Shown here: positions 25,906 through 64,000 of the stretch, piece by piece | Position numbering within the stretch: position 1 is the stretch's first letter | Layout of the letters: every line of letters begins with the position of its first letter | NCBI GenBank assembly: GCA_044892505.1 | Contig: CM097883.1 | Span: 413,354,001-413,418,000 of the forward strand | From: Schmidtea nova | Lineage: Eukaryota | Length of the DNA stretch: 64,000 nucleotides | Reading direction: 5' to 3' | Program-made: the position numbers and the translations under genes | The notes under the pieces: generated by a model | The model's input: only the letters and a program-made list of their open reading frames with translations | What the model was told of the DNA's origin: nothing | Databases searched by the model: none

Positions 25906-27105
25906 CTATAAATCATTGAATTTTAGGGAAAACAAAATTTTATCTATTGTCAAGATTTCCGTACTTATCAGCTCTTCATCTTCACATATCTCAGTCTCCT
26001 CAAAGTTCTTCTTGAAAAACCTATTAACTTTTTCTACTACTCGTTTGTCCTCCTCTTCCTGCTTCTTCTCCTTATCCTCTCTATTCTTCCACAAGTCTAC
26101 TTCCTCTCTTCTTTTGTCCTTGTGGGAGTCTCCGACAGCTTTTAAAAAACCGCGCCGACAACGTCCTCTCCTGACGGGGCCATCTCGTTTGGGGCAAATG
26201 AGATCGTCTCTTCATCGTCTTCATAACTTTAATTTTTTATGTATGTAACTTGTCCATTGTACGTACCATTCTTGTTCCTTTGTGATTTCTTGTTCCTTTC
26301 GTTGTTTCCATTTTGTAATTTCCTCTTTGTTGTCAGTTATCTCTATGCATAATCCATATGTATAGCATGTAACAACTCTTTTTGTCTATTCGGGCAATCT
26401 CTCTGGATATGTCCTTGTTTTCCACTTGCATAACATGAAATAATTCTTCGTTGCCTATTTGGACATTCTCTCTGGGTATGTCCCTGTTGCCAACATCCAT
26501 AACACTCGATACTTCTCCGTTGTCGATTTGGACATTCCCTTTCTACATGGTCTTGATCTCCGCAACAAAAGCATTTTATAATATTATTATCTAGAGTTAC
26601 GTTCTCTCTATATCGTCTGGTTCTATTTTCCGGTTCGACATATCTATTATTTTTAATGGTGACATCTTTATAGCTTCTTTTTATCTCTTCTTCAGGTATT
26701 CTTTCCTTTACCGTGTAAATCTCTTCGCTCATCTGCTTAACTTCGTGTAATTTCTTGATCTTCTTTTCCGCGGAACAATGTACCAATAGCTGTTCTTCTA
26801 ATTTTTCTGCCGTCAATTAATGACTCATAACTTTGTCCACCAGACTCTTTATTTTTCCAAAATAAACCTTTGGTTCTTCATTAGTTTTCCTATATTCAAA
26901 CGCGGCTTTAATATCCTGAGCTATCGTGGTCTTCTTTCTATAAGCTATCCGAAGTTTTTCTCTATAATCTTTAATAGACGGATCAACTTGGAAATATTTT
27001 TCTTTGATCTCCTTGGGGATCTAGAGTCCTGCGATCATATCTTGTCGAAACCCAGTTGCAGAATAATGTCCTTAAAAGATTCATTGAAGAAATTTATTTC
27101 AAAAA
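25906..27105 (-). mobile_element. Degenerate LTR-retrotransposon gag (three CCHC zinc knuckles)
   Basis: ORF 26343-26816 has CFCCGDQDHVEREC, CYGCWQQGHTQREC and a degenerate third knuckle. Frameshifted gag-like coding sequence continues on both sides. Confidence 0.8.
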
Positions 27106-27961: not shown

Positions 27962-27967
27962 TTTATT
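27962..27967 (-). promoter_or_regulatory. Candidate polyadenylation signal of the TRAF gene
   Basis: AATAAA on the minus strand about 50 nt after the TRAF stop codon. Confidence 0.35.
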
Positions 27968-28016
27968 TCACGTCAAATCACCAAAAATTCTTAGTTAAAG
28001 TTTTTTGGAAAACCCT

Positions 28017-31000
28017 TTAGTTGCGTTTCACGCTAAATTTTATAAATATTTGATCGCAAATACAAAGTGCAGCATTATTAACTATTTCTTTTAGTTCAAT
28101 AAATTGTGAAAATCCGTAACTTTCGTTTTTTTCATTTTCCGGTTTACAGAGTTCTTCAGTTAACGGTTGACTGCACAAGCTTCTAGTTTCAGTCACGTAA
28201 TCCAATTTTGTTGTCTGGTTTATTATTGCAAACGTGACTTCACATTTCATGGGCCATGATAAAATATCATCATACGGACCTTTCATAATACAGAAACATA
28301 TGGACAAATACCTAGCGTTCCTGTCTTCGCAATCCAAATCAGCATTGAGACACATTTTGTAGCCGTGCTTGAAAGCATAGAAAGGATCGCTATAAAGGCT
28401 AAAGTCCGTGTCAGTTTCCATTTGCTTGATTTTTTCAGAAAATTTATCAATTTTCCATATGAATTCATCACAATATTGCCGTTCTATATCATCTCTCATT
28501 TTAGATATTGTCATCTCTGTGTTGGGCTGGTGGAATAAAAAAAATTTGTAAAATATGGGACAAAGCAGAAAAAAACAAATAAATTGTTTAACAAATCAGA
28601 ATAAATTAGTAATAAATGTTTAAAAATAAATTCCAATATTAAGAAAAGTAAATAATTAAAATAAATTATAAAAAACAATTTTTATAAATAAATAAATTGA
28701 ATTAAATGAAGTAAATAACATTTGCATTGGCCACTGGCATTAATGTAATACCGATAATTGTTCACCAAGTGTGAGAGTAGTATGTCAGTCGATGGGTTGC
28801 CGCAGTTCGCAACGCATCGGTGGTTTGCATGGTTTCATTGGTGATGACTTGGTATTGTTGGCTAACGTGCTTTGATGTTGGTTGATAGCTGAATGATTTA
28901 GTGAGCGTTTGAAGTTGAAATGCGTGTTGGAACTAGTAACCAAAAATTTTTTTAGAATTTGCGTATATGCAGTCTCGACAGTGTCAACATGCGAGTGTAC
29001 ATGTAATGTCCGAGCGACTGGTTTTTAGGGTCGGTGATACGATAGAAAACTGCCACATAAACCTGCATGTTTTTGCTGACATTTCCAACCCCGTATCGGT
29101 GATGGAAGCACAGCCACTCAAAAATCGTATATATTTGCGTTGAAAATTCATTTTAAAAACAATTTTTTGAAACCAAAAATTTGTAACAGTGATTTCACCA
29201 GCCAGTTTTAATCACTGTGAGTTACTGAAGTATGTTTTGTTGTTATTTTTTATTATTGGAAGTGTTATATAAATTGTAATGACATTTAATATATATATTT
29301 CGAATGGCAATTTTACTTTCATTTGTTTTGGTTTTTTTATTTATGGGTTAACCCTCATAATATCCGGGGTAAAATATATAAGGACGACGACGGGTTGACT
29401 GGCCTCTCGACACTGACTCTTGGATCGATGTGGGAACGTTGAACCAAATTTGGGCGGGAGAAAAGAGCATTACAACTGAGTATTCATTGTTTTGGTGAAT
29501 TATTTTTGGATGAATAAAAGTAGATAGAAACATTTTAATAATTGATATATAATTTTTTGAGGATCAATAAAGGTAAATGTGTAATAGCAGGGAGTATTAA
29601 ATAATCAAGATGCAATTATGTGAGAGGATCGAAAAGTAAGCAGATGTGTAAGTCCTATCTTCAGCAAGAACCCGAAAGAGACAACAATGTTGCGTTTGTT
29701 AAAATAAAAAGAAAATAAAGTTAAATGTACAAATACGAAAATTGGAAAAATCATAATTAAAGTAAAAACATTAATTAAAAATTTATAAAAATTAAAATTA
29801 AAGATTGAAAGGGGGAAACTGGTATGGGAGGATGCCAAATGATGAGACAAATTCAAATATGGGTATATAAAATTAAAATGGTGCTCCAGAAAGAAATATT
29901 AAGAAAATACAAATTTATTAAAATAAATAATTACCTTATAGGAAACCTGAGCTAATGGGAAACCCGAACGATGTGAGAAATCCGGAGCATCAACAAATCT
30001 AGTATTTAGGGAAATAAATTGATAAGTTGAAGGGTGCCCGGTTGAAAGCCGCAAACTCACTTAGCGGCAACTCCCAATTTAAATAATAATTTGACAGATC
30101 CATTAAGGTGCGACAGAACAGAGCGACAAGGCACTATTTAAACTGAGAGCAATTTTTCGAGATTGCCAGTTGGTCAAAGAAAAACTTAAAGAGTTGAGCA
30201 AGAAATCGGAATGTAGGAAAAGCAACTGAAACGGTAATAAAAAGTAATAAATTATCGATCTATCAATTCCTGCGTACCAGAAAGGGAGATATCCCATTGG
30301 TTGCTCTACCCTACTGCAGAATGCAGAAAAATTCTAAATTTCTGTGATTTATAGTGTTGTTATTGAATCAAAAATAAAACTTATTGTGTTAGGTCTAATT
30401 TCTTGTCGTGATAAAAAGATAACACATGAGTCAGATACCACCGACTACTCGTTAATAACCCAACAATATAGTGAGGAGTAGTTTTGGCAATGGAACTCAC
30501 CTACTCATTAGATTATTGACACAGTGTACAGTACTAACATAGTTATTTGGGGAATAACTATGGGTACACGAGTGTGGTAGATTGATATTTATGTTGCGGT
30601 ATGGGTTGTATTAACCTTTAGAAATCGTTAATAATTTTCATAACAACACCCATACCACCCAGCATCTGTTTTTTTCTCAACTTTGCTTAGTTTTTGAATA
30701 TTTTCTCAAAACCCTTCGAGAATCTTTGCCTGCTCCTGAAAATTGTCATTAAATATTTTCTAAAATTAATTTCAAAAAATATTTATATTTTTAAAATATA
30801 TATTTTTACATTCAATGCATCAAATTGTTCAGTTAATATTTTGATGCCGACAACTCGGTATTATTCAACTAAATTGAAATAGTTTTTAGCGGATATTGTA
30901 AATTCATTATTTTGCTAACAATATATTCGTTGATAAACACACTGTACCGGAAGGGCCATCTAAACTTTAAAAAAACGACCCCTAAATGGATTGCGTTTTT

Positions 31001-34000
31001 TAATAGTACTATAGGCACAGATCTTGAAACAGTATATCTACAAAATCCTGATTGAGCTATTTAGGAGTAAAGCATAGAACGTTATAGTTTTAAGTTAATA
31101 TAAGTTATACAATGACAGTTCTATATATATTTATGTATATATTACAGAGTAATGAAAATAATTTTCTATAGTTTTAGACGGCGACACATTATGTAATATG
31201 TTTCAATAATAATATTTTTGGGTATTAAGTAGTAAACTATTCGTTTGTTTTAAAGTTCAAGTTTGCGCGGTGGTGTGATCTACAAGTCATTATTACAAAA
31301 GTACGGTGGTAAGATTGAGTGTCATATTTTATTTCATTTTTAAAGTAGGTATTTTGTTAAAATTACTTTATTAGTGCAATGTTTTTTTCAAATATAATAT
31401 CCATGTTTAGTATTCTAAAAATGAAACGCTAACGTTTAAAATTTTCTTTTCAGATGCCACTTCATGAAACCCGTGCATTGAATCATGAAGAAAACAGGAA
31501 GAAAGTAAACCTTATTTGCTTCAACAAATCAAACTGTAATATCACAGATGTCGTGTTAGCAAAAATTCGTCGTTACTTTATGCCAACTTACGAGATGACA
31601 AACCAAAATTTACCATGTGGAATGTGCAGCAGGTGTTGCTCTAATTTGATAGACATTAGTGACGGAAAGAAGTCTACCAGAGTACTACCGACACCTTTTG
31701 ATTTCCGTGTGATAGCGCTCTATACTACAGCAACTAGATCAGACCCGATTCCAGTTTGCGAGTATCAAATTTGCGAAAAAGCAAGGCAATCTGGGAAATC
31801 AATGTCAAAGGCAAAGAAGTGTCGCCCACGAAAAGACAAAAGTACAGCCTGTGGCCCACCGGAAAAAATCATGACTGTATGCAGTGCATGTCAGACTCGT
31901 TATGGGAGGAACATTCGTCACAAGTGTACGGTACAGGCTTTACGAAAGAACATTGTAGAATTGTGTGTATTTACAGATAGAAGAACGCAAGAATTGGCTG
32001 CTACTTCAATGATAAAACAATCGACTGAAGGATACAAAGTGTCAACCAAGGAGTTTTATTCTGGTGGTTCATACCCTCTGCAAGTTCAAGTTGGCTCTAA
32101 AGAAAGTCCGTCCATTGTGCAAGTTAGGGTAGATGGTGTTACGAAACTTCAAAATGTATTGTCAGCGTCTAACAACGATATGAAACGTAAAATTATACCC
32201 TTTGTTAGAAGCATGTTTGGCCGAACTTCAGTAGAATCATTCATTGGAGAACAACTTCAACGACGTGACAAAACATGTGCTGAATATTTTGATTGCCTTA
32301 GCCACGATTTTGAATGCACCTCTACCAACAAAGGAGTTGATGCGACTGCATCCTGTACAGTTGTTTACTGTAATGATGTTGTCGGACTGATAGACCTAGT
32401 CTGTGAGAAGAGAAATTTGGATAAAGAAAATTTTTCCATCAAGATTGAAATCGATACAGGTGGAGATTTTTTAAAATCCTGTCTAAACATTAGCAATGCT
32501 GAAACCACCAAAAAACCCATCACTAATCCGTCAAAGAGACTTATTGAAAAAGTCATGCTCGATACAAGCGTGAAGAAGCTCATTATCATCGCAATAGCCT
32601 ATAAGGTTAAAGAAACATATGAGAATGTTCGTTACATTCTAGAACTCTTAAAAATTGATGCTGGTTTTGAAGAGTCTATAAAAAAATTTGAGTCAGCTTA
32701 TATGAATACGGACATGGCAATAACAACAGCAGTACACATTGTTTGTGTTCACTTGATTCATTTTTGTAAACTTAAGAACTCCATCCTCGGCCGTTTCAAT
32801 GAACAAGCATCGGAGGTAGTATATACAGATTTTAAAGCCATGTGGATATCAGCTGGCAAAGTTAGTGAAAATCATGCCCATTTCAATAATCACCTTTTGG
32901 ACTGTATTATTCGCTAAAATTCTCGACACTTGTAACTGCTATGCTGCCATTACATTATAATTACCTTCCAGTCCATCTCCCTCTTTAGCCCGTTGTGTTT
33001 AACGAACTGTCCATCTGACAAGTCAACAATAAAGTGTACATATTATATGGATGGCTCATGTCATTGTTCTCATGTTTTCATGTGACAAAAATGTGCGTAC
33101 GGTTTAAATAGTTTTGCTTCAATATCATTTTACAGATTTTCGTCAATTGCTCGTTAATAGCTCAATCAGGATTTTGTAGATATACTGTTTCAAGATCTGT
33201 GCCTATAGTACTATTAAAAAACGCAATCCATTTAGGGGTCGTTTTTTTAAAGTTTAGATGGCCCTTCCGGTACAGTGTGTAAAGCAATAAAACGAATTTT
33301 ATTTCCCGTAATGTATACCGGACTGAATTTCAATTTTTTTTACTTTAATTTGTCAACAAATTGAAATTTTTCGAATTTCTTTATATTTTTATAAAAGCTT
33401 AATTAGATCTTTATCCTATATTAAATATCAACAAGCCATTGGTAAAGTAATGTATTATTGTTTTAATATGTATATGAATACAAGTTTGGTATCAAGAAAA
33501 GTAGTTTAATGTGTGCAGAGTGCTATGTAGAATTGCTTGAACCAAATTGTTTTTAGTTACAAGAAAAGTAGTCAACCTATTTGAAATTACTGATGTCTAC
33601 AGAATAGGAGGAAAAAATATAGAATAAATGTACATGTAGACGCAATCAAGATTAAATAATGGATCGAAAGACAATTAATTTATGACAATATAATTATGAC
33701 AATTTATCAATTTACAATTTGTGATCTTGCGAAAATTTATTGACATTTTTTTATTTTATGATGATGGACATAATTAATTATTTAATTTTATGTAATTTAG
33801 AAAAAGAATCTTTTGTTTTGAAAATATTTTCTGTAAATTAATGTTTTTAACTATTTGTAAAACGGTTTATATTTTGATTTATATTTTAATTCAATAAAAT
33901 AAAGATTGATGTTCAATTTTTTGGGGTGTAATTTTTATTTAAATTAAAATTTAACTAAACACTACCAATTTTAGAAAAAAATAATGGGATTATCGAAGTT

Positions 34001-36029
34001 GACTAATCTCATGTATTTACCAGAAAATATCTTATTGGGAGAGTACTTGTTAAACAATCCGTTTGGGTAGTTGGTGCACGACAAAGAAGGACCAACTTTT
34101 GTAGGTTTTTGACATATTTGTCATACAAATACAATTGAAAGATGTTGGAGATCCTTAAAAACTTATATTCCAAATTCGACCAATGTTGATAACATAGACT
34201 TATATATTAATAAATTCGTCTTTGATAATCTATACGATGGAATCAATTCGAGTAACATTTTTTAAAAAATAATGTGAACTTATTTCAGATCATTTTAGTT
34301 AAATAAATTATTTCATTAATTTTTTTGCTTTTTATTATTATTAAAATTTTAATATAAAAAATTTATATAAAAATTACTACCCCCCAAAATTGAACATCAA
34401 CTATATTTATGATCTACAAAGGTCAGCAAAATGAAATAATATACTAAAGATAAAAAAAATTCTGTTTTGAAAACAATTTCAATCAACTCAAGTAGAAAAA
34501 TAACAAACATTATTGGCAGATTAAGTGCCTTCAAAATTAGTATATAAACTCACTAATTTTTCAGTCAAATCACCCAAAAAATCTTCGCTTAAGAAGAATT
34601 AAGAAGAAGATAATTGTATAATATGTAAAATTTAACAATCACTGACCACTGAATTGGATTTAACAATTAACAAATTGATTTCGGTTTTCTCATGCTCTGA
34701 CTTTGTAATTGATTCAATAGGTTTCGACTCTTCTTATTCGACTAACCTTTGTTTAGCTATGTTCAATTTAATCTTCTCAAATTCACATATTCCAATAATA
34801 TGATTTTAATTGACTTAATATGTTTCTTTTACAATCTGCTCTACTACACTGTCGATTTCTCCAATCTAATTTTCTCTTTTCTAAGTATTATTTTTTCAAT
34901 TTTAACTTCTAACTACTGATTCATCTGTTGTGGTTTCTCCCTTTTATAGCTCGTTATTTTCTGGTACTTGAGATTATTTTTGTCTTTCCAATTTCATTGC
35001 CTCTAGAATACTCCACACTTTCCTCACTGCTTCCGAATTATCTCTGATAACTGTTGAGATATGTAATATTCCTTTTGTTTTTCAACTTTGGAATTAGTTT
35101 CTCCCTTTTTGTACTTACTAATTATCAATAACCTTTTCTTGCTTTATTGATTGATTTCTTTTATTTTGCTAATACTTTCTCATTTCATAATTTTTGCTCT
35201 TCTTTCTTCTCCGAGTTCCAGAACATGTCTCGTTTACCCTGTCAATTCCCCCCCTATTATTTTCTTTCTTTATTATATTATTTAATTTTATTATTTAGAT
35301 ATCTCAACAAGTTTAGTGTATTGTAATAAAAATATCTTTTGATCTATAGTCATACCATTATGGAAATTATTGATATAAATAAAGAGATTAAATGTGAAAC
35401 AAAAAGATAATCATGAAAGTAAAAAACTACATTAATTTTGCACTAACCTAATAATATTTTATATGATTATTAGGTGGGCTGTTAAAAGCTACTTTAATAT
35501 ATTATTCAATTTTTTAAAAATTAAATAAAAATTTTACTTTCAAAGTTTTAAACTCCAAATCCATCTTTTCTATTTTAGATTCTAAAGATTTGATTTGATC
35601 TTTTAACGCATTTATTTCATTTTGATTCGCTGATGATTTGTATTGTCGTTTGTTGCATATCTCCAAATGTTGATCCATATTAATTAGTTCACAACTGTAA
35701 TTGCAAAGGTTTCGTGGGCAAAGAACTTTTAATTTTGATATTTTGATATTTATTAATTGATCGACTTTCAAATTTTCATCGAAACTTAATGTTTCCTTTT
35801 GGCATTCTTCTTCTTTTGTTGGGCATGGCTTCTCTTGTCCTTCTAAATATTTGCTGATACACTGATAGCAATATCGGCATCTGCACGGACCAATGAATGC
35901 ATTAATTAACAAATGCTTACAAATTGAACAATTGAATTCATCAATTGACGTTTTTGTATCTTCCAGTTGAAAGTCATTCTCAAGCATTAATTTCCAAATT
36001 TTTCTATATTTAACTTTTAACTCCGACAT
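28017..36029 (-). CDS. TRAF: TNF receptor-associated factor (RING - zinc finger - coiled coil - MATH); two coding exons, exon 2 disrupted by an LTR
   Basis: Exon 1 is 36029-35538 (RING CSICKHLLINAFIGPCRCRYCYQC...CP, zinc finger CPRNLCNYSCELINMDQHLEIC, phase-0 donor AAA|GTAAAA). MATH region is 28514-28017 (FIWKIDKFSEK, SDPFY...GYKMCL, LSICFCIMKGPYDDILSWP, YGFSQFI, DQIFIKFSV). Phase-0 acceptors exist at 30735 (ancestral) and 28526 (LTR-derived). Predicted about 333 aa via the 28526 acceptor. Confidence 0.85.
28520..30664 (+). mobile_element. Solo LTR (about 1.0 kb net) inserted in TRAF exon 2, containing a nested LTR
   Basis: Termini TGTTGGG...CCCAGCA with a perfect 4-bp TSD TCTG (28516-28519 and 30665-30668). 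The 3' part matches the family block at 16560-16875. Removing it restores a continuous TRAF reading frame. Confidence 0.8.
29341..30465 (-). mobile_element. Nested LTR-like element, opposite orientation
   Basis: Right end TAACCCAACA is the reverse complement of the TGTTGGGTTA start at 21238 and 62750. The block at 29810-29930 is the reverse complement of 63400-63520. The left end is degenerate; flanks TTAT / ATAT (3/4). Confidence 0.5.
30938..33279 (+). mobile_element. Chapaev-type (CMC group) DNA transposon, internally deleted
   Basis: Perfect 124-bp TIRs (30938-31061 and 33156-33279) starting CACACTG, with a 4-bp TSD TAAA. CAC termini plus a 4-bp TSD are characteristic of Chapaev. Confidence 0.85.
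31454..32917 (+). CDS. Chapaev-like transposase, 487 aa, lacking the central catalytic segment
   Basis: N-terminal Cys/His motifs (HEENRKKVNLIC, LPCGMCSRC, CEYQIC, CSAC...HKC), first catalytic block KIEIDTGGDFLKSC, and C-terminal block VHIVCVHL...LGRFNEQASE. No D-x-K / H-x-x-x-PC segment between them. A splice acceptor sits directly before the ATG. Confidence 0.75.
   Translation: MPLHETRALNHEENRKKVNLICFNKSNCNITDVVLAKIRRYFMPTYEMTNQNLPCGMCSRCCSNLIDISDGKKSTRVLPTPFDFRVIALYTTATRSDPIPVCEYQICEKARQSGKSMSKAKKCRPRKDKSTACGPPEKIMTVCSACQTRYGRNIRHKCTVQALRKNIVELCVFTDRRTQELAATSMIKQSTEGYKVSTKEFYSGGSYPLQVQVGSKESPSIVQVRVDGVTKLQNVLSASNNDMKRKIIPFVRSMFGRTSVESFIGEQLQRRDKTCAEYFDCLSHDFECTSTNKGVDATASCTVVYCNDVVGLIDLVCEKRNLDKENFSIKIEIDTGGDFLKSCLNISNAETTKKPITNPSKRLIEKVMLDTSVKKLIIIAIAYKVKETYENVRYILELLKIDAGFEESIKKFESAYMNTDMAITTAVHIVCVHLIHFCKLKNSILGRFNEQASEVVYTDFKAMWISAGKVSENHAHFNNHLLDCIIR
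33906..34400 (+). mobile_element. Degenerate Merlin/ISXO2-like element
   Basis: Imperfect TIRs of about 40 bp (TTGATGTTCAATTTT..GGGG.GTAATTTTTAT). Remnant HTNTIERCWRSLK resembles the H-T-x-x-I-E-x-x-W motif of Merlin/IS1595 transposases. Confidence 0.55.
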
Positions 36030-36406
36030 ATTTTCAAATGACTAATTGTGAGAAAGAAATCAATACAACAACATTTGGAACTGCAATTTAATTGGTTAAT
36101 CATAATTGGCAGAGTTAGTTACTCAGGCACATTTCGAGCGGTTTCCCTTCAAAAGTCGTTCATTAGAATATTGGGTATAATTTTGTGTAATAAACGTATA
36201 TACCGTCAATTGAAATCTATTCCAAATGTATGCGTCGGGTTTCAGGTTGAGCTTTCACCAGTTTTTAAATTTACCGATAAAATGGAGAAAAATAAACAAT
36301 TTACCGATAATATCGGTAGAAATGGTAAATTTCTAAAACAAATTAATCGCTGGGCGCAAAATCACGAAAACAACAATATCCCGTATTTCCAAACACGTCA
36401 AAACTC

Positions 36407-36949: not shown

Positions 36950-37347
36950 AGAAAACAATATCCTTCTTTTAAATCCACAGAAATCCAAAAAAATCTCCAA
37001 ATTAAACCTCAAAACCTATCCAAAATTCGATTGCCAAAGATATCGCTCCTTCCCACTAAGCCAAATTCAAAAAAAACACAAAATTACAATTCCGAATTGG
37101 ATCGATAAAACAACTTTTCTAGAAATCCATTCAATCAAAATATCAAATAAAATCGCAACCAAAACGCGCACACAGACGCGGTCAAGAAATATATTAGAGA
37201 CGCACACACAGTGCGTAAGCAAAATATAAAAAAAATGAAACCACGCACGCACAGACGCGATGGTAAAAAACTAAAAAAATCAAAGTGCACACAGACACGA
37301 CCCACACACCCAGAAATCACCAGTAATTTATTAAATATATACATATA

Positions 37348-38665
37348 CGTGGTGCGCCCAATAAGTCGTGAGACTAAAATAGAAAGACTTATAATAGAAA
37401 AATAGAAAGATATTAATAGAAAGATATCAACTCAAAACTTTGTATTTAGAACAAGCATGGTAAATAGGCATCATTTTTCAAAATAAATTCCTTCTGCACT
37501 GACAATTTTCCCAGCGAATAACGAGGTTTTCGAAGGCGTTTTTGAAGAATTCTGGAAGCTTTTCTCCCAGAAAACTCTCAACGGCTGCTCTCAAGTCATG
37601 TTTGTTGGCAAACACCTGACCCCACAGATGCTTCTTAAGATGATTAAACAAGAAAAAATTGGATGGAGCCAAATCAGGGCTGTATGGAGGATTGGGAAGC
37701 AAATTGAGCCCGCAACGCTCAATTTTGGCCATGGAAACGCTGCTGGTGTGGATGGTAGCATTATCGTGTAAAAAATAGAGATCACACACTCTGCTCTTGC
37801 GTCGTGCCTTCCTTGCTTGCTGCACGATGTTGGAGTAGTAAGAACTATTGATCTTCACGCCGGATTCAGCAAAGTCAGTCAGAATAATGCCATTGGCGTC
37901 CCAAAACACCGTCAGCATGAGAGCCTTTCGGTGGCAAGTTGAGGACCGCATTTTCCGTGAGCTGCTTTCTCCTGGCAGTTTCCATTCTTGAGACTCTCTT
38001 TTAGATTCGGGGACATAAATGGACAACAGTGTCTCGTCCACAGCGATGATATTATCAATGAAATGGTCTCCAACATTGGTCTTGATCTGCAGATTCTTCA
38101 AGCAGCATTCCAAGCGTCGTTGTCGCATTTCCACAGTTAAGAAGCGTGGCACAAAACGGGAACATAGTTTTCGAATACCACTTTCAGTGAGGAAATTATG
38201 CACAGTGCCTTTGCTCACATTTAGACGGGTTGTGAGCTCTCTTGTCGTTATTTTTCTCTCGTTTTGCACGATTGTCTGCAGCTTTTGCGTTATTTTTCAT
38301 CAATTTCTGAGGGTCTTCCAGATCTTTCTTTGTCCACCACGGAGGTTCTACCACTCTGAAAGTAATTGAACCAACGATAAATTGTTGCTGTCGATGGGAA
38401 CTCTTGTTGGTAAACAGCTTTCAGTTCAGAAAGAACCTCTTCTCTATTTTTTCCTTTCAGAAAGAGAAAGCGAATAACGCTACGGTATTAAAAAGTTTCC
38501 AGAGACATTTTTCGAATGTTCGCAAAACTATACTTAAACAATAATGGATTATTAAAACAAAATACATTTTCTTTACCTATATATGTTGAAGTTTAAATAT
38601 GTCTGTATCAATTTTTTACTATTATTATTTCTATATTAGTATCACGACTTATTGGGTGCACCACG
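37348..38665 (-). mobile_element. Full-length mariner element with a pseudogenised transposase
   Basis: 1318 bp, TIRs CGTGGTGC(G/A)CCCAATAAGTCGTGA and TA TSDs. Transposase starts at ATG 38508 with an early stop and a frameshift. Motifs: IYRWF...GRTS...RSGRP, FVPRFL, IIAVDET, FLHDNA, YSPDLAPSNF (third catalytic Asp appears as Asn). Confidence 0.95.
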
Positions 38666-39429
38666 TATATTAAATTAAAAATATGCTTATATATAACAAA
38701 CAACCAGAGTCTTTTAAATAAGCATAAAAACCAGCAGAATTTAAAATTAGAGAAAAAAAAGTACTTGCAGCATTTCAAAGTAGAAGAAAATAAAGCACTT
38801 TAATAAAATGTATTCAGATATAGATTTGCAACTTGCTACTGTTCTAGCACTACAAAAACTCAGACGTTTTATCATGGATACTAAAAAGAACAAGCAATGT
38901 TACTTAAAAATAAATATTCTTTTAGTGTTTATTTTGTATTTTATCTTTTACCCGATTAAGACAAATACAGAACGGGGTACAAAAAATCGGAGCCCCACAA
39001 TACCTAACGAAACCAAAACCATATTTTTGCAACAGTTTTTTATTGAATCCTTCCATTTCGTAAAACTAAAAGATGTGATGAGTGTGATTGAGTGGCTGAA
39101 AATTATTTTACAATGGATTGTTAAACTTAATTATGGTTAATTAATATAACACTTTTATACTCATATTAATTTAATTTAACACTAAAAATTCAAATTTAAG
39201 ACTTTATTTTCTATTTAATGTTGTCAAAACAAAATTTTGCATTTTTTCAGGAAAGAAATTTGCCATTTAGTCACAACTGTCATCCAGATTCAGGATTTTG
39301 CCACCACACGCAAATTAATATACTAGTGAGGAATAGTAATCCTAATAATATACCAATTGTATTCAGTAAATAATTTAAACAGACAAATATAAAATAAAGA
39401 ATCTTATGTAGAAATGTATAAAAATTTAT

Positions 39430-43228: not shown

Positions 43229-61403
<18,175 letters not shown>

Positions 61404-62749
61404 CTCTATTATTTATTTATTTGAGAACACAAATTGTAACTCTCTCGTTTCAATGTGTAATATTAACTGTTTTATTGTGTTCATTATGTGTGTTTAGATT
61501 TTGTGTCCAAAAATTGGAATTTTTTATTGGATTTTAGTGAAAACAATTTTAATAGTTTTAATCTAGAATTTTTTCTCTAAAATATAGATTAATTAATTGT
61601 TAATTTTTACAAATTTTTCCATTGTTGAGAAAGTGAATTTCGTATCTAATCGAATTGTTAATATTTATTATAGTATAAACACAAAGTGAACTTATATAAA
61701 TATCATAATTAAAAGGAGCATGCGTTGGTGAGATCTCGTGAATAGGGATGGTATTCGAAAAGGGAATACAGGTACAAGTGCTTAAGCTAATTTACAATTT
61801 CATTAAAATACAAAAAAAATTTCAGTCTTATTTTACCGAGAAAAAAAATTTTTATCACCTATCCAATGCCTCTGTTATTTGAATATAATTTTCTTAGTTA
61901 TCTTCTTGTGTCAATTGTCTACAATAATGTACTAATTTAAAGTCAGATATTTTATTCTAAATAACATGGGTTATCTCCTTAAATTCGGACAATTTTCCCT
62001 AAATTTACTTGAACAATATTATTTTCTTATAAATTCATTATTTTATTAGATGTCTGCCTTTGCGATACGAATTCTGCTTGGCGTAATTCTTACCCACAAA
62101 ATGCACCATACTTACAAGACTTGGGAGAACTGAATAATGATTATTACAAAGAAAAATTTTGGAAATGATTTTATTATATTCACAAAAAAGACATTTGTTC
62201 TGTATTAAAATTTTTCTAAAGTTTGGGCTGACCGAAGTAAAATTTCTGATTTATTTAAGCATGTCGAAAATTCGCACTCGCAACCAGAAGTTTATTTTAA
62301 ATCTACAATAACACCAAATATTTCAAACTAAGGACGCATAACATTTGAAAATTGATAAACACGAGTAATTAAAATATTTATTCGTGCAAAGCTGCAAGCA
62401 CCAAAGTAGTAGTTAAAATCATCTCAAAAGATAACACAAAGTTAGATTGCTTGTCGAATTCACATATCAATAGCAAATTCGTATTAACATACGAAAGACA
62501 AGAATCAAAGTACTTAAATAATAAGAAAATAACGAAAATAATTTATTAAAAATTTTGACATAAATCAATATCGAGAAATCGTCAAAATCAATGAAGCAGA
62601 ATAAGAAATTGTAATAAATTAAATCTTATTGTTTTAATCAGTCATTTAAACATGAAAACACCTATTACAAAAGTATATTGGATACAGAAATCATTTTTTC
62701 ATGATAGTATACAAAATATTTCTAAATAAATAAAAATCAGTTAACATAC

Positions 62750-64000
62750 TGTTGGGTTATTATGAAATAGTCGGTTACTGACTGACTCCTCGTGTCCTTT
62801 CTTTATAAAGGTATTAACATAACTCAACACAATAATCTTTATTTTCAAATTTTAATACACAATTACAGTTATACAATTTGTCTGCACTCTTCAATCGCTA
62901 GGGTTAGGTCTTCGAATGTGAGATCCCCTTTCTGGTACGCAAACAATTGGTTTGGCATAAATTTAAACCTATAAACTTTAAAACTTCTTTTTGAAAACTA
63001 TCTAATTTTAAAATTAAATTTTCATGTTTCGACCGACTGGCCATTTAAGCTATTTGTCTGAGGTTTTATAGTGACTCCTGTCACTTTGGCTAATTCTGCA
63101 CTGATTAAATTTCTGTCGGTATACTTAATTTTTTTTATTTAATGTTTTGGAGATAATCAGATTGCTTCTGGGGTTTTCCTTAAAAATAATTAAATTGTTG
63201 ATTAATCGGATTCTCCTTACTACTAGGTTTTCCCTTTTACCGCGGGATTTCCAATTAATTTAGGGTAATTGCATTTGTGGTTGTTCGCCAGCGATTCCTC
63301 TAACCTTACCATTTTCTTCATAATTAGATAATTTTGTTGACGACTCGGGTTATCCACATTGCTTGTGTTCTCTACTAACTCGTTTTTTCCAATAGGTAAT
63401 AATTTTCTTTATTTAATTAGTTTCTTCTTGATATTTCGTTCTGGGGCAATTTTTTAATTTGGTATTACCATATTTTAATTGGTCTCATCATTTGGCATCC
63501 TCCCGACCAGTTTCCCTGTTGTTAAGGAAGGACTTTATGTCCTGATTATAATTGAATTTTAGAATAAAAATAGAAATAAAATACACTAAAATTGTTAGAA
63601 TAAAAATAGAAATAAAAAATTACTAAAAATAGGAAAAATATTTAAATAATAAAAATATAAAATAAATAGTATTTTATCGTAACTAAAATTAAAAATAACT
63701 ATTAATTTAGTAATTTAAAATTATCAATTAAAATATAAGTAATAATATAAATAAGGTCAGCAAGACCAGTTAGAGGTAGAAAAATAAGGTTGACATTTAA
63801 ATAAAACCAAGTGTAATTGTTTGTGTTATAATACCAGATTAGAATCGGAGAGAGAAACTCATTTGACATATAAAAGATCTAGTATAGTTGTTTGATCGAT
63901 AGAAATCGAGTATAAAAAGAAAACAAGATTCGATCAGAAATATTATTAAGACAGTGATTATTATTTGCAATCCAACCAAGTGTAAATTACTTGTGGTGGG
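62750..64000 (+). mobile_element. LTR-like repeat running off the window
   Basis: Starts TGTTGGGTTATT; shares blocks with 21238-21860 and the reverse complement of 29810-30465. Confidence 0.45.

What the first reader, a model, noticed from the sequence alone, without database searches (positions are those of the whole stretch)
28017..30745. TRAF coding exon split by a solo LTR whose end supplies a replacement in-frame splice acceptor
Seen in sequence: the 2145-bp insert 28520-30664 is flanked by the TSD TCTG. Deleting it rebuilds a single minus-strand exon starting at acceptor caattttcag|GAG (30735) and reading EQAKILEGF*ENIQKLSKVEKKTE-MTISKMRDD..., in phase with the exon-1 donor and continuing the TRAF coiled coil. 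The orphaned 5' piece (30735-30665) carries a TGA (30706-30708), while exon 1 (164 codons) and the MATH frame remain stop-free. The LTR terminus reads TTTTTTTTATTCCACCAG|CCC AAC ACA GAG ATG on the minus strand: a polypyrimidine tract plus CAG in phase 0. Inference: the gene may survive by splicing to this LTR-derived acceptor (28526), losing a net 20 coiled-coil residues. Established knowledge: the TRAF coiled coil supports trimerisation and partner binding, so the rescued protein could behave differently. The alternative is a young pseudogene. Because other family members share this terminus (16162), the family may carry a built-in acceptor.
Basis: partly seen in the sequence, partly recalled or inferred. 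Interest (0 to 1): 0.8.

Follow-up and report, generated by a model that had tools for sequence, protein, structure and literature searches.

The report
TRAF gene exon split by LTR-like insert
A mobile-element insertion of about 2 kb has cut the second coding exon of a TRAF-type signalling gene in an AT-rich animal genome; the end of the insert does look like a usable in-frame splice site, but nothing available here shows that it is used, and a recently broken gene copy is the more likely reading.

Summary
The sequence observation holds. On the minus strand lies a two-block TRAF-family gene. Exon 1 is 36029-35538 (RING, zinc finger, start of the coiled coil). The MATH/TRAF-C block is 28514-28020. 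Between them sits a 2145-bp non-coding insert (28520-30664) with TG...CA ends and a perfect 4-bp target-site duplication.

A 79%-identical relative (P0001) reads straight through the insertion point. Its residues 1-20 match the orphaned 5' piece and its residues 21 onward match the 3' piece.

Two refinements:
- "Solo LTR" is inferred from structure only. No full-length copy is in the window.

The acceptor-like motif at the insert's end is real (14 of 18 pyrimidines plus CAG, phase 0). It is uncommon (33 of 2882 AG sites) and shared by the only other copy with an intact end (16162).

Rescue remains untested:
- Both native acceptors are intact.
- The insert carries strong donor-like sites that could define a stop-bearing cassette exon.
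- No product of this locus is in the protein collections.
- The family is very large (3240 relatives), so loss of one copy is cheap.

Verdict: a real, ordinary exon disruption by a transposable element, with an unproven splice-rescue hypothesis.

The parts
35538..36029 (-). TRAF-family exon 1: 164 codons covering RING, one TRAF6-like zinc finger and the start of the coiled coil. Phase-0 donor AAA|GTAAAA, with GT at 35537-35536.
   Evidence: 34-41% identical to the N-termini of full-length relatives P0060, P0033, P0047 and P0035. Best PDB matches are TRAF6 RING-ZF1.
30760..35537 (-). Native intron, 4778 nt. It hosts a 2.36-kb element with inverted terminal repeats at 30930-33287.
   Evidence: No further exon detectable by similarity to 12 relatives.
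30665..30759 (-). Orphaned 5' part of exon 2 (coiled coil). Two phase-0 acceptor candidates: tttAG|AAA at 30759 and ttcAG|GAG at 30735. One in-frame stop. Ends with one TSD copy (30668-30665).
   Evidence: 10 of 20 residues identical, ungapped, to P0001 residues 1-20.
28520..30664 (.). 2145-bp non-coding insert, LTR-like: TG...CA ends, short imperfect terminal inverted repeat, 4-bp TSD. Mosaic of modules shared with other copies in the window. Its own sense orientation is unknown.
28527..28546 (-). Acceptor-like motif at the insert's terminus: 14 of 18 pyrimidines, then CAG. The first base after the AG is 28526, in phase 0 with the MATH frame.
   Evidence: 33 of 2882 AG sites on this strand are as good. 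(the same score at the terminus of copy 2).
28017..28519 (-). 3' part of exon 2: second TSD copy (28519-28516), tail of the coiled coil, complete MATH/TRAF-C domain (ORF 28514-28020) and stop codon.
   Evidence: PF21355, 7e-28. (78% identical to P0001). (all 9 invariant and 8 near-invariant family columns kept). (TRAF5/3/2/1/6/4 TRAF-C structures).
27962..27967 (-). AATAAA about 50 nt downstream of the stop codon; a candidate polyadenylation signal of the gene.
30492..30503 (-). Strongest donor-like site inside the insert on the gene's strand (TAG|GTGAGT, 8 of 9 consensus positions, GT at 30500). With a native acceptor it could define a stop-bearing cassette exon. Other such sites lie at 30615, 30060 and 29934.
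   Evidence: only 16 of 2790 GT sites on this strand score 8 or more.
16162..16752 (-). Second, shorter (591 bp) copy of the same element family. It shares the first 200 nt or so, a 50-nt internal block and the last 24 nt. It is itself inserted into a third, fragmentary copy with a 3-of-4 matching 4-bp duplication (ATGG / ATGA).
62746..63516 (+). Fourth, diverged partial copy (64-76% identity to insert positions 196-852). It begins with TGTTGGG at the module boundary seen in the other copies.

Best explanation
A two-exon TRAF-family gene (RING, zinc finger, coiled coil, MATH) was hit in its second coding exon by integration of a 2.1-kb LTR-type retroelement terminal repeat. The integration left a 4-bp target-site duplication. 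The upstream remnant of the exon now also carries a stop.

The locus is most likely a recently disabled member (young pseudogene or null allele) of a very large, fast-turning-over TRAF-like family.

The polypyrimidine-CAG motif at the insert's end is a genuine, conserved feature of the element's terminus, and it happens to lie in frame. Its use as a rescuing acceptor is an untested possibility.

Shown: the anatomy, the homology of both flanks, and the family membership of the domains. Inferred: the LTR class of the insert, and the loss of function.
For: - Anatomy and frames.
- Domains: MATH 7e-28, RING; TRAF structures.
- Both flanks are homologous to adjacent parts of one relative.
- Discrete mobile unit: both termini recur exactly at 16162-16752. 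That copy is nested in a third copy with its own 4-bp duplication.
- No pol or gag ORF inside or next to the insert.
- Loss of function is favoured for five reasons. There is a stop in the remnant. Native acceptors at 30759 and 30735 are intact and would still be recognised. Strong donor-like sites in the insert (30500, 8 of 9) could make a stop-bearing cassette exon. The bypass intron would be 7011 nt with 5 equally pyrimidine-rich decoy YAG sites. No product of the locus is in 5.8 billion protein clusters at any of the three length ranges searched.
- The family is very large, with 3240 relatives at E<=1e-3 and many tandem multi-MATH predictions, so one copy is dispensable.
Against: - Exon 1 (164 codons) and the MATH ORF (165 codons) are both free of stops. 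The MATH domain keeps every invariant and near-invariant family residue.
- The only stop lies in the 5-9% of the coding capacity that a bypass would discard.
- The terminal acceptor motif scores better on pyrimidine content than either native acceptor (14 against 12 and 11 of 18) and is in phase 0.
- A very young insertion would give the same picture under either model.
- Absence from the protein collections is weak evidence, because the organism's own gene calls seem not to be in them at all.
Confidence: 0.6

Rival explanations
1. Splice rescue. Exon 1 is spliced straight to the acceptor at the insert's end (28526), or to the weaker AG giving 28514. This skips the orphan piece and the whole insert, and yields a RING-zinc finger-short coiled coil-MATH protein that lacks 20 to 28 coiled-coil residues.
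For: - Phase-0 donor and phase-0 acceptor with four sense codons before the MATH frame.
- The acceptor motif has 14 of 18 pyrimidines plus CAG, in the top 1% or so of AG sites on the strand.
- Both flanking ORFs are intact and the MATH residues are conserved.
- The stop is confined to the skipped piece.
Against: - No transcript or protein evidence.
- Native acceptors are intact and lie upstream, so they are met first.
- Donor-like sites in the insert favour exon definition of the stop-bearing piece.
- The intron would be 7 kb with equally good decoys.
- Coiled-coil register after the deletion is unknown. The joined model was deliberately not built.
Confidence: 0.17
2. MATH-only product. Transcription starts in the insert, or reads through it, and translation starts at the ATG six bases past the insert's end (28514). 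This gives a 165-residue TRAF-C-only protein. By established knowledge of RING-less TRAFs, such a protein could act as a competitor of full-length family members.
For: - The ORF starts with ATG right after the second duplication copy and runs through a complete MATH domain to a stop followed by AATAAA.
- Many short MATH-only entries exist among the relatives, though many may be fragments.
Against: - The orientation and promoter activity of the insert are unknown.
- The frame is open for 27 codons upstream, and several out-of-frame ATGs lie in the last 250 nt of the insert.
- The exact 165-residue product is not on record.
- The relative has a different residue at the position of that Met.
Confidence: 0.07
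3. The insert is not a solo LTR but another kind of non-autonomous mobile element, for example a cut-and-paste element with short terminal inverted repeats and a 4-bp duplication. The disruption of the exon stands unchanged.
For: - The termini form a short imperfect inverted repeat (TGCTGGG... and ...CCCAACA).
- Copies differ greatly in length (591 against 2145 bp) and are modular.
- No copy in the window is paired around an internal gag-pol region.
Against: - TG...CA ends with a non-specific 4-bp duplication and only about 7-12 nt of terminal inversion are the classic LTR signature (own knowledge).
- Length and module variation in the middle fits a variable U3 region.
- Nested solo copies are usual for LTR families.
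Confidence: 0.15

Closest known systems
Vertebrate TRAF proteins (TRAF2/3/5/6; PDB 4gjh, 1kzz, 1ca4, 3hct)
   Same: The C-terminal MATH/TRAF-C domain matches TRAF5/3/2/1/6/4 structures at 1e-12 to 3e-19. The N-terminal RING plus first zinc finger matches TRAF6 RING-ZF1 over residues 30-126. A coiled coil lies between them.
   Different: Only one zinc finger. Pfam zf-TRAF (PF02176) is not detected in exon 1 at E<=0.01. The coiled coil is short. The gene belongs to a lineage-specific expansion whose nearest full-length kin are only 35-45% identical. The gene is interrupted.
Splice sites and exons derived from transposable elements (B1 in rodent Nkg2d, PMC2685100; intronic IAP elements altering RNA processing, PMC4383553; reviews PMC13709765 and PMC4859970)
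   Same: A mobile-element sequence offers a polypyrimidine-AG motif inside a gene, which could change the exon structure and the protein isoform.
   Different: Those cases rest on transcript evidence and mostly concern intronic insertions. Here the insertion is in a coding exon and no transcript evidence is available. Only the abstracts listed were seen; the papers were not read in full.
Retrotransposon insertions in exons that are removed by splicing, as in the maize waxy alleles (own knowledge, not checked here)
   Same: An LTR-type element inside coding sequence is bypassed through splice sites in or near the element, leaving partial function.
   Different: A plant system with demonstrated transcripts. 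Here bypass would delete 20-28 residues and is hypothetical.

Membership tests
TRAF family (TNF receptor-associated factor-like adaptor / E3 ligase) | C-terminal TRAF-C / MATH domain | tested here: met
   PF21355 at 7e-28 and PF22486 at 5e-25. TRAF1-6 structures at up to 3e-19. All invariant family columns kept.
TRAF family (TNF receptor-associated factor-like adaptor / E3 ligase) | N-terminal RING finger | tested here: met
   PF00097 at 7e-6, above its cut-off. TRAF6 RING-ZF1 structures at 4e-6.
TRAF family (TNF receptor-associated factor-like adaptor / E3 ligase) | TRAF-type zinc finger(s) after the RING | tested here: inconclusive
   PF02176 not reported for exon 1 at E<=0.01. However, the PDB match to TRAF6 runs through ZF1 (residues 30-126), and several relatives carry PF02176. 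Only one finger is present; relatives P0033, P0035 and P0047 have two.
TRAF family (TNF receptor-associated factor-like adaptor / E3 ligase) | Coiled coil (TRAF-N) linking the fingers to MATH | tested here: inconclusive
   Heptad-like K/E/L-rich sequence at the end of exon 1, in the orphan piece and before MATH. Weak Pfam coiled-coil-type hits. No dedicated coiled-coil predictor was run, and the region is interrupted.
Solo LTR of an LTR retrotransposon | TG...CA termini with a short terminal inverted repeat | tested here: met
Solo LTR of an LTR retrotransposon | Target-site duplication of 4-6 bp without sequence specificity | tested here: met
   CAGA/CAGA at the insert. ATGG/ATGA at the nested copy 2.
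Solo LTR of an LTR retrotransposon | The same repeat found as a direct pair around gag-pol, with a primer-binding site and polypurine tract, in full-length family members | not tested
No such copy in the window.
Solo LTR of an LTR retrotransposon | No internal coding capacity; multiple dispersed or nested copies | tested here: met
   No ORF of 90 aa or more in the insert. Copies or fragments at 16162-16752, 16772-16803 with 16099-16165, 17490-17586, 15550-15627 and 62746-63516.
Functional splice acceptor derived from a transposable element (exonisation or bypass) | Polypyrimidine tract plus YAG, in frame with the downstream exon | tested here: met
   14 of 18 pyrimidines, CAG, phase 0.
Functional splice acceptor derived from a transposable element (exonisation or bypass) | Transcripts that use the junction | not testable with these tools
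   No expression data. No product of the locus in the protein collections.

The most novel reading that the evidence does not exclude
The element family carries, as a conserved part of its terminus, a strong splice acceptor. When a copy lands in a coding exon in this orientation, the acceptor lets the host skip the insert. This TRAF paralogue would then be expressed as a variant with a coiled coil shortened by 20-28 residues and possibly altered oligomerisation or partner choice. A mobile element would thereby soften its own exonic insertions and generate isoform diversity in an expanding immune-adaptor family.
Probability: 0.1. Interest if true: 0.55.

Novelty: new member of a known kind. Interest (0 to 1): 0.3.

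Why it matters
If the bypass were real, it would be a clean natural example of a coding-exon insertion converted into an intron by a splice site built into the element's end, in a lineage-expanded TRAF family where coiled-coil length could tune trimer formation. As it stands, it documents birth-and-death turnover of a TRAF paralogue by a mobile-element hit, and it gives a well-defined locus where simple expression data would decide the question. Splice sites derived from transposable elements are already well documented, so the conceptual gain is modest.

Tried and rejected
1. Paralogues in the window: none (tblastn).
2. Word searches with the MATH ORF and with exon 1 separately. Only P0001 (79%) and one distant hit for MATH; nothing for exon 1 in its length range.
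3. To see proteins of 220-700 aa without joining exons, I searched with alignment A1, made of relative P0060 plus the two window blocks as separate rows. No hit is closer than 45% to either block.
4. Exact look-ups of P0001, the MATH ORF and the 487-aa intronic ORF: none on record.
5. Genomic context of a distant relative (P0156, locus L001) showed an intronless ORF call, which is useless for intron positions.
6. A missing middle exon was sought with 12 relatives against 28000-36100: none found.
7. Pfam on ten ORFs between 18 and 27 kb, looking for pol or gag next to family fragments: nothing. The 149-nt repeat at 20699/27105 does not extend into an LTR pair.
8. tRNA scan: none.
9. A reading in which the element is removed like an intron, using a donor at its own 5' end, was rejected. 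The GT sites in the first 20 nt are weak and none restores the frame (reasoned).
10. A 45-nt mini-intron covering the stop in the orphan piece was considered and dropped as unsupported.

- I did not cut the insert out and close the flanks. The flanks were compared apart.
- I did not build, search or fold the joined exon-1-plus-MATH model.
- I built no consensus of the element copies.

This goes against the rule on sequence from memory.

Full report
**What the window is.** The window is an AT-rich (about 30% G+C) eukaryotic sequence with seven N runs, which I left untouched. It holds mariner-type and other mobile elements. Nothing in it or in the one fetched locus (L001) looks human.

**The gene.** Two long open blocks lie on the minus strand.
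- Block 1 is 36029-35538, exactly 164 codons from an ATG. It carries a C3HC4 RING (PF00097, 7e-6) and a Cys/His finger, and it ends in K/E/L-rich coiled-coil sequence at a phase-0 donor AAA|GTAAAA.
- Its best solved-structure matches are TRAF6 RING-ZF1 chains over residues 30-126.
- Block 2 is the ORF 28514-28020, 165 codons. It is a complete TRAF/meprin MATH domain (PF21355, 7e-28).
- Its best structure matches are the TRAF-C domains of TRAF5, 3, 2, 1, 6 and 4 (3e-19 to 3e-12).
- An AATAAA lies about 50 nt past the stop.

A search of 1.84 billion representatives found 3240 relatives of the MATH block at E<=1e-3 (951 at E<=1e-10). Many are multi-MATH predictions typical of tandem arrays. Full-length relatives P0033, P0035, P0047 and P0060 (401-463 aa) have the order RING, zinc finger(s), coiled coil, MATH. 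Exon 1 is 34-41% identical to their N-termini, and the MATH block 35-40% to their C-termini. The two blocks therefore belong to one TRAF-family gene. No other exon is detectable between them by similarity, and no paralogue lies in the window.

**The insert.**
- Between the blocks, 28520-30664 (2145 bp) starts TG and ends CA on the minus strand. It has a short imperfect terminal inverted repeat, has no ORF of 90 aa or more, and is flanked by a perfect CAGA duplication.
- Its two ends recur as exact 17-mer and 16-mer matches at 16729-16745 and 16162-16177, where 0.2 or fewer are expected by chance.
- Those matches delimit a 591-bp copy that shares the first 200 nt or so (79% identity), a 50-nt internal block and the last 24 nt.
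- That copy sits inside a third, fragmentary copy. Its flanks continue each other in the family sequence and carry a 3-of-4 matching 4-bp duplication.
- A fourth, partial copy (62746-63516, plus strand) matches insert positions 196-852. It begins with TGTTGGG exactly where copy 2 stops matching, so the family is modular.

Two independent integrations with 4-bp duplications and TG...CA ends fit a solo LTR best. However, no copy in the window is paired around gag-pol. The class is therefore inferred (about 0.85), and the insert's own sense orientation is unknown.

**The insert really splits a coding exon.** I did not cut it out; I compared the flanks apart.
- The only close relative, P0001 (183 aa, a fragment, UniParc-derived, no DNA on record), is 78% identical to the 3' flank from the duplication onward.
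- Its first 20 residues align ungapped to the 5' flank, 10 of 20 identical.
- Frame arithmetic agrees: 71 nt of 5' flank plus one base equals 72.
- The window has 10 residues more than P0001 just 5' of the insertion point.
- The orphan piece holds one in-frame stop where the relative has a sense residue.

**Refinement of the acceptor.** They are in frame and stop-free, and they begin right after a TAG whose AG forms tttAG|AAA at 30759. An alternative alignment of those P0001 residues to the end of exon 1 needs a gap and is poorer. The native acceptor is therefore probably 30759.

**The candidate rescue site.**
- The insert ends with a T-run, TTCCACCAG, then four sense codons into the ATG of the MATH ORF, in phase 0.
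- By a simple measure (pyrimidines at positions -20 to -3, plus YAG) it scores 14 of 18. Only 33 of 2882 AG sites on this strand do as well. The native acceptors score 12 and 11.
- Copy 2 has the same score at its terminus, so the motif is a family feature. That covers two of the two intact 3' ends in the window.

Several points count against its use.
- Both native acceptors are intact and lie upstream.
- The bypass intron would be 7011 nt and would contain five equally pyrimidine-rich YAG decoys.
- The insert carries strong donor-like sites on the gene's strand: 30500 TAG|GTGAGT and 29934, each 8 of 9, and 30615 and 30060, each 7 of 9. Only 16 of 2790 GT sites score 8 or more.
- Together with a native acceptor, such a donor could define a stop-bearing cassette exon.

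**Evidence on function.**
- None of the protein searches returned a product of this locus in any plausible form: exon 1 alone or with the orphan piece, MATH alone, or a product of about 333 aa.
- This is weak evidence, because the organism's own gene calls seem to be absent from the collection.
- The MATH domain keeps all 9 invariant and 8 near-invariant columns of a 20-sequence family alignment.
- The single stop lies in a piece that makes up 5-9% of the coding capacity, by codons or by one-step-to-stop paths. That hints at differential constraint, but the comparison was made after the fact and a very young insertion would give the same pattern.
- dN/dS could not be computed.

**Verdict.** The most probable reading (about 0.6) is a recently disabled paralogue of a very large TRAF-like family. 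Splice rescue through the element's terminal acceptor is possible (about 0.17) but unsupported. A MATH-only product from the ATG just past the insert is a minor rival (about 0.07). Splice sites supplied by transposable elements are a known phenomenon; I saw only the abstracts of PMC13709765, PMC4859970, PMC2685100 and PMC4383553 listed. Even if rescue were true, this would be a new member of a known kind.

I did not close the flanks over the insert. I did not build, search or fold the joined exon model, and I made no consensus of the element. I declare one slip: in my reasoning I recalled from memory a few terminal bases of a known insect LTR element. I used them nowhere.

Noticed in passing
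window 30930-33287: A 2.36-kb element with 141-nt terminal inverted repeats (96% complementary) sits in the TRAF intron, only about 170 nt upstream of the native acceptor. It carries an intact 487-aa ORF (31454-32917, plus strand) with no Pfam family, no PDB relative and no exact record in the collections. This may be an unclassified young DNA transposon. The target-site duplication was not resolved.
   Followed up: partly
window 30932-31000 and 33217-33279: The inverted-repeat arms of that element translate, on one strand, to a short stretch (WPFRYSV..IN) resembling the conserved WPF(R/K)xxV..(L/I)IN motif of the MATH family. Several relatives hit it weakly (best E=0.04 in 8 kb). Probably chance, but odd next to a MATH gene.
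   Followed up: partly
window 37343-38670: Mariner/Tc1-type element with 59-nt inverted repeats and a 263-aa transposase ORF (PF01359, PF13358, HTH_Tnp_Tc3_2), about 1.3 kb upstream of the TRAF start codon.
   Followed up: partly
window 26343-26816 (minus): A 157-aa ORF with CCHC zinc knuckles (PF00098) containing a 69-nt tandem duplication (26382-26519), just downstream of the TRAF gene. It looks like a gag remnant of some retroelement. No pol domain was found in neighbouring ORFs.
   Followed up: partly
window 14264-14725 (plus): ORF with a SAM domain (PF00536, 7e-10) next to an N run; possibly an exon of a host gene.
   Followed up: no
window 15011-15350 and 45434-45701: A 170-nt tandem duplication (96% identical), and an AT-rich array that is both tandem and palindromic with a period of about 25-28 nt.
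   Followed up: no
window 15400-17700: A cluster of fragments of the same LTR-like family in both orientations (15550-15627, 16099-16165, 16162-16752, 16772-16803, 17490-17586): a nest of repeated insertions.
   Followed up: partly
window 1322-2170, 11211-12004, 12838-14057: The long 'ORFs' listed here run across N runs and are artefacts of the masked stretches.
   Followed up: no
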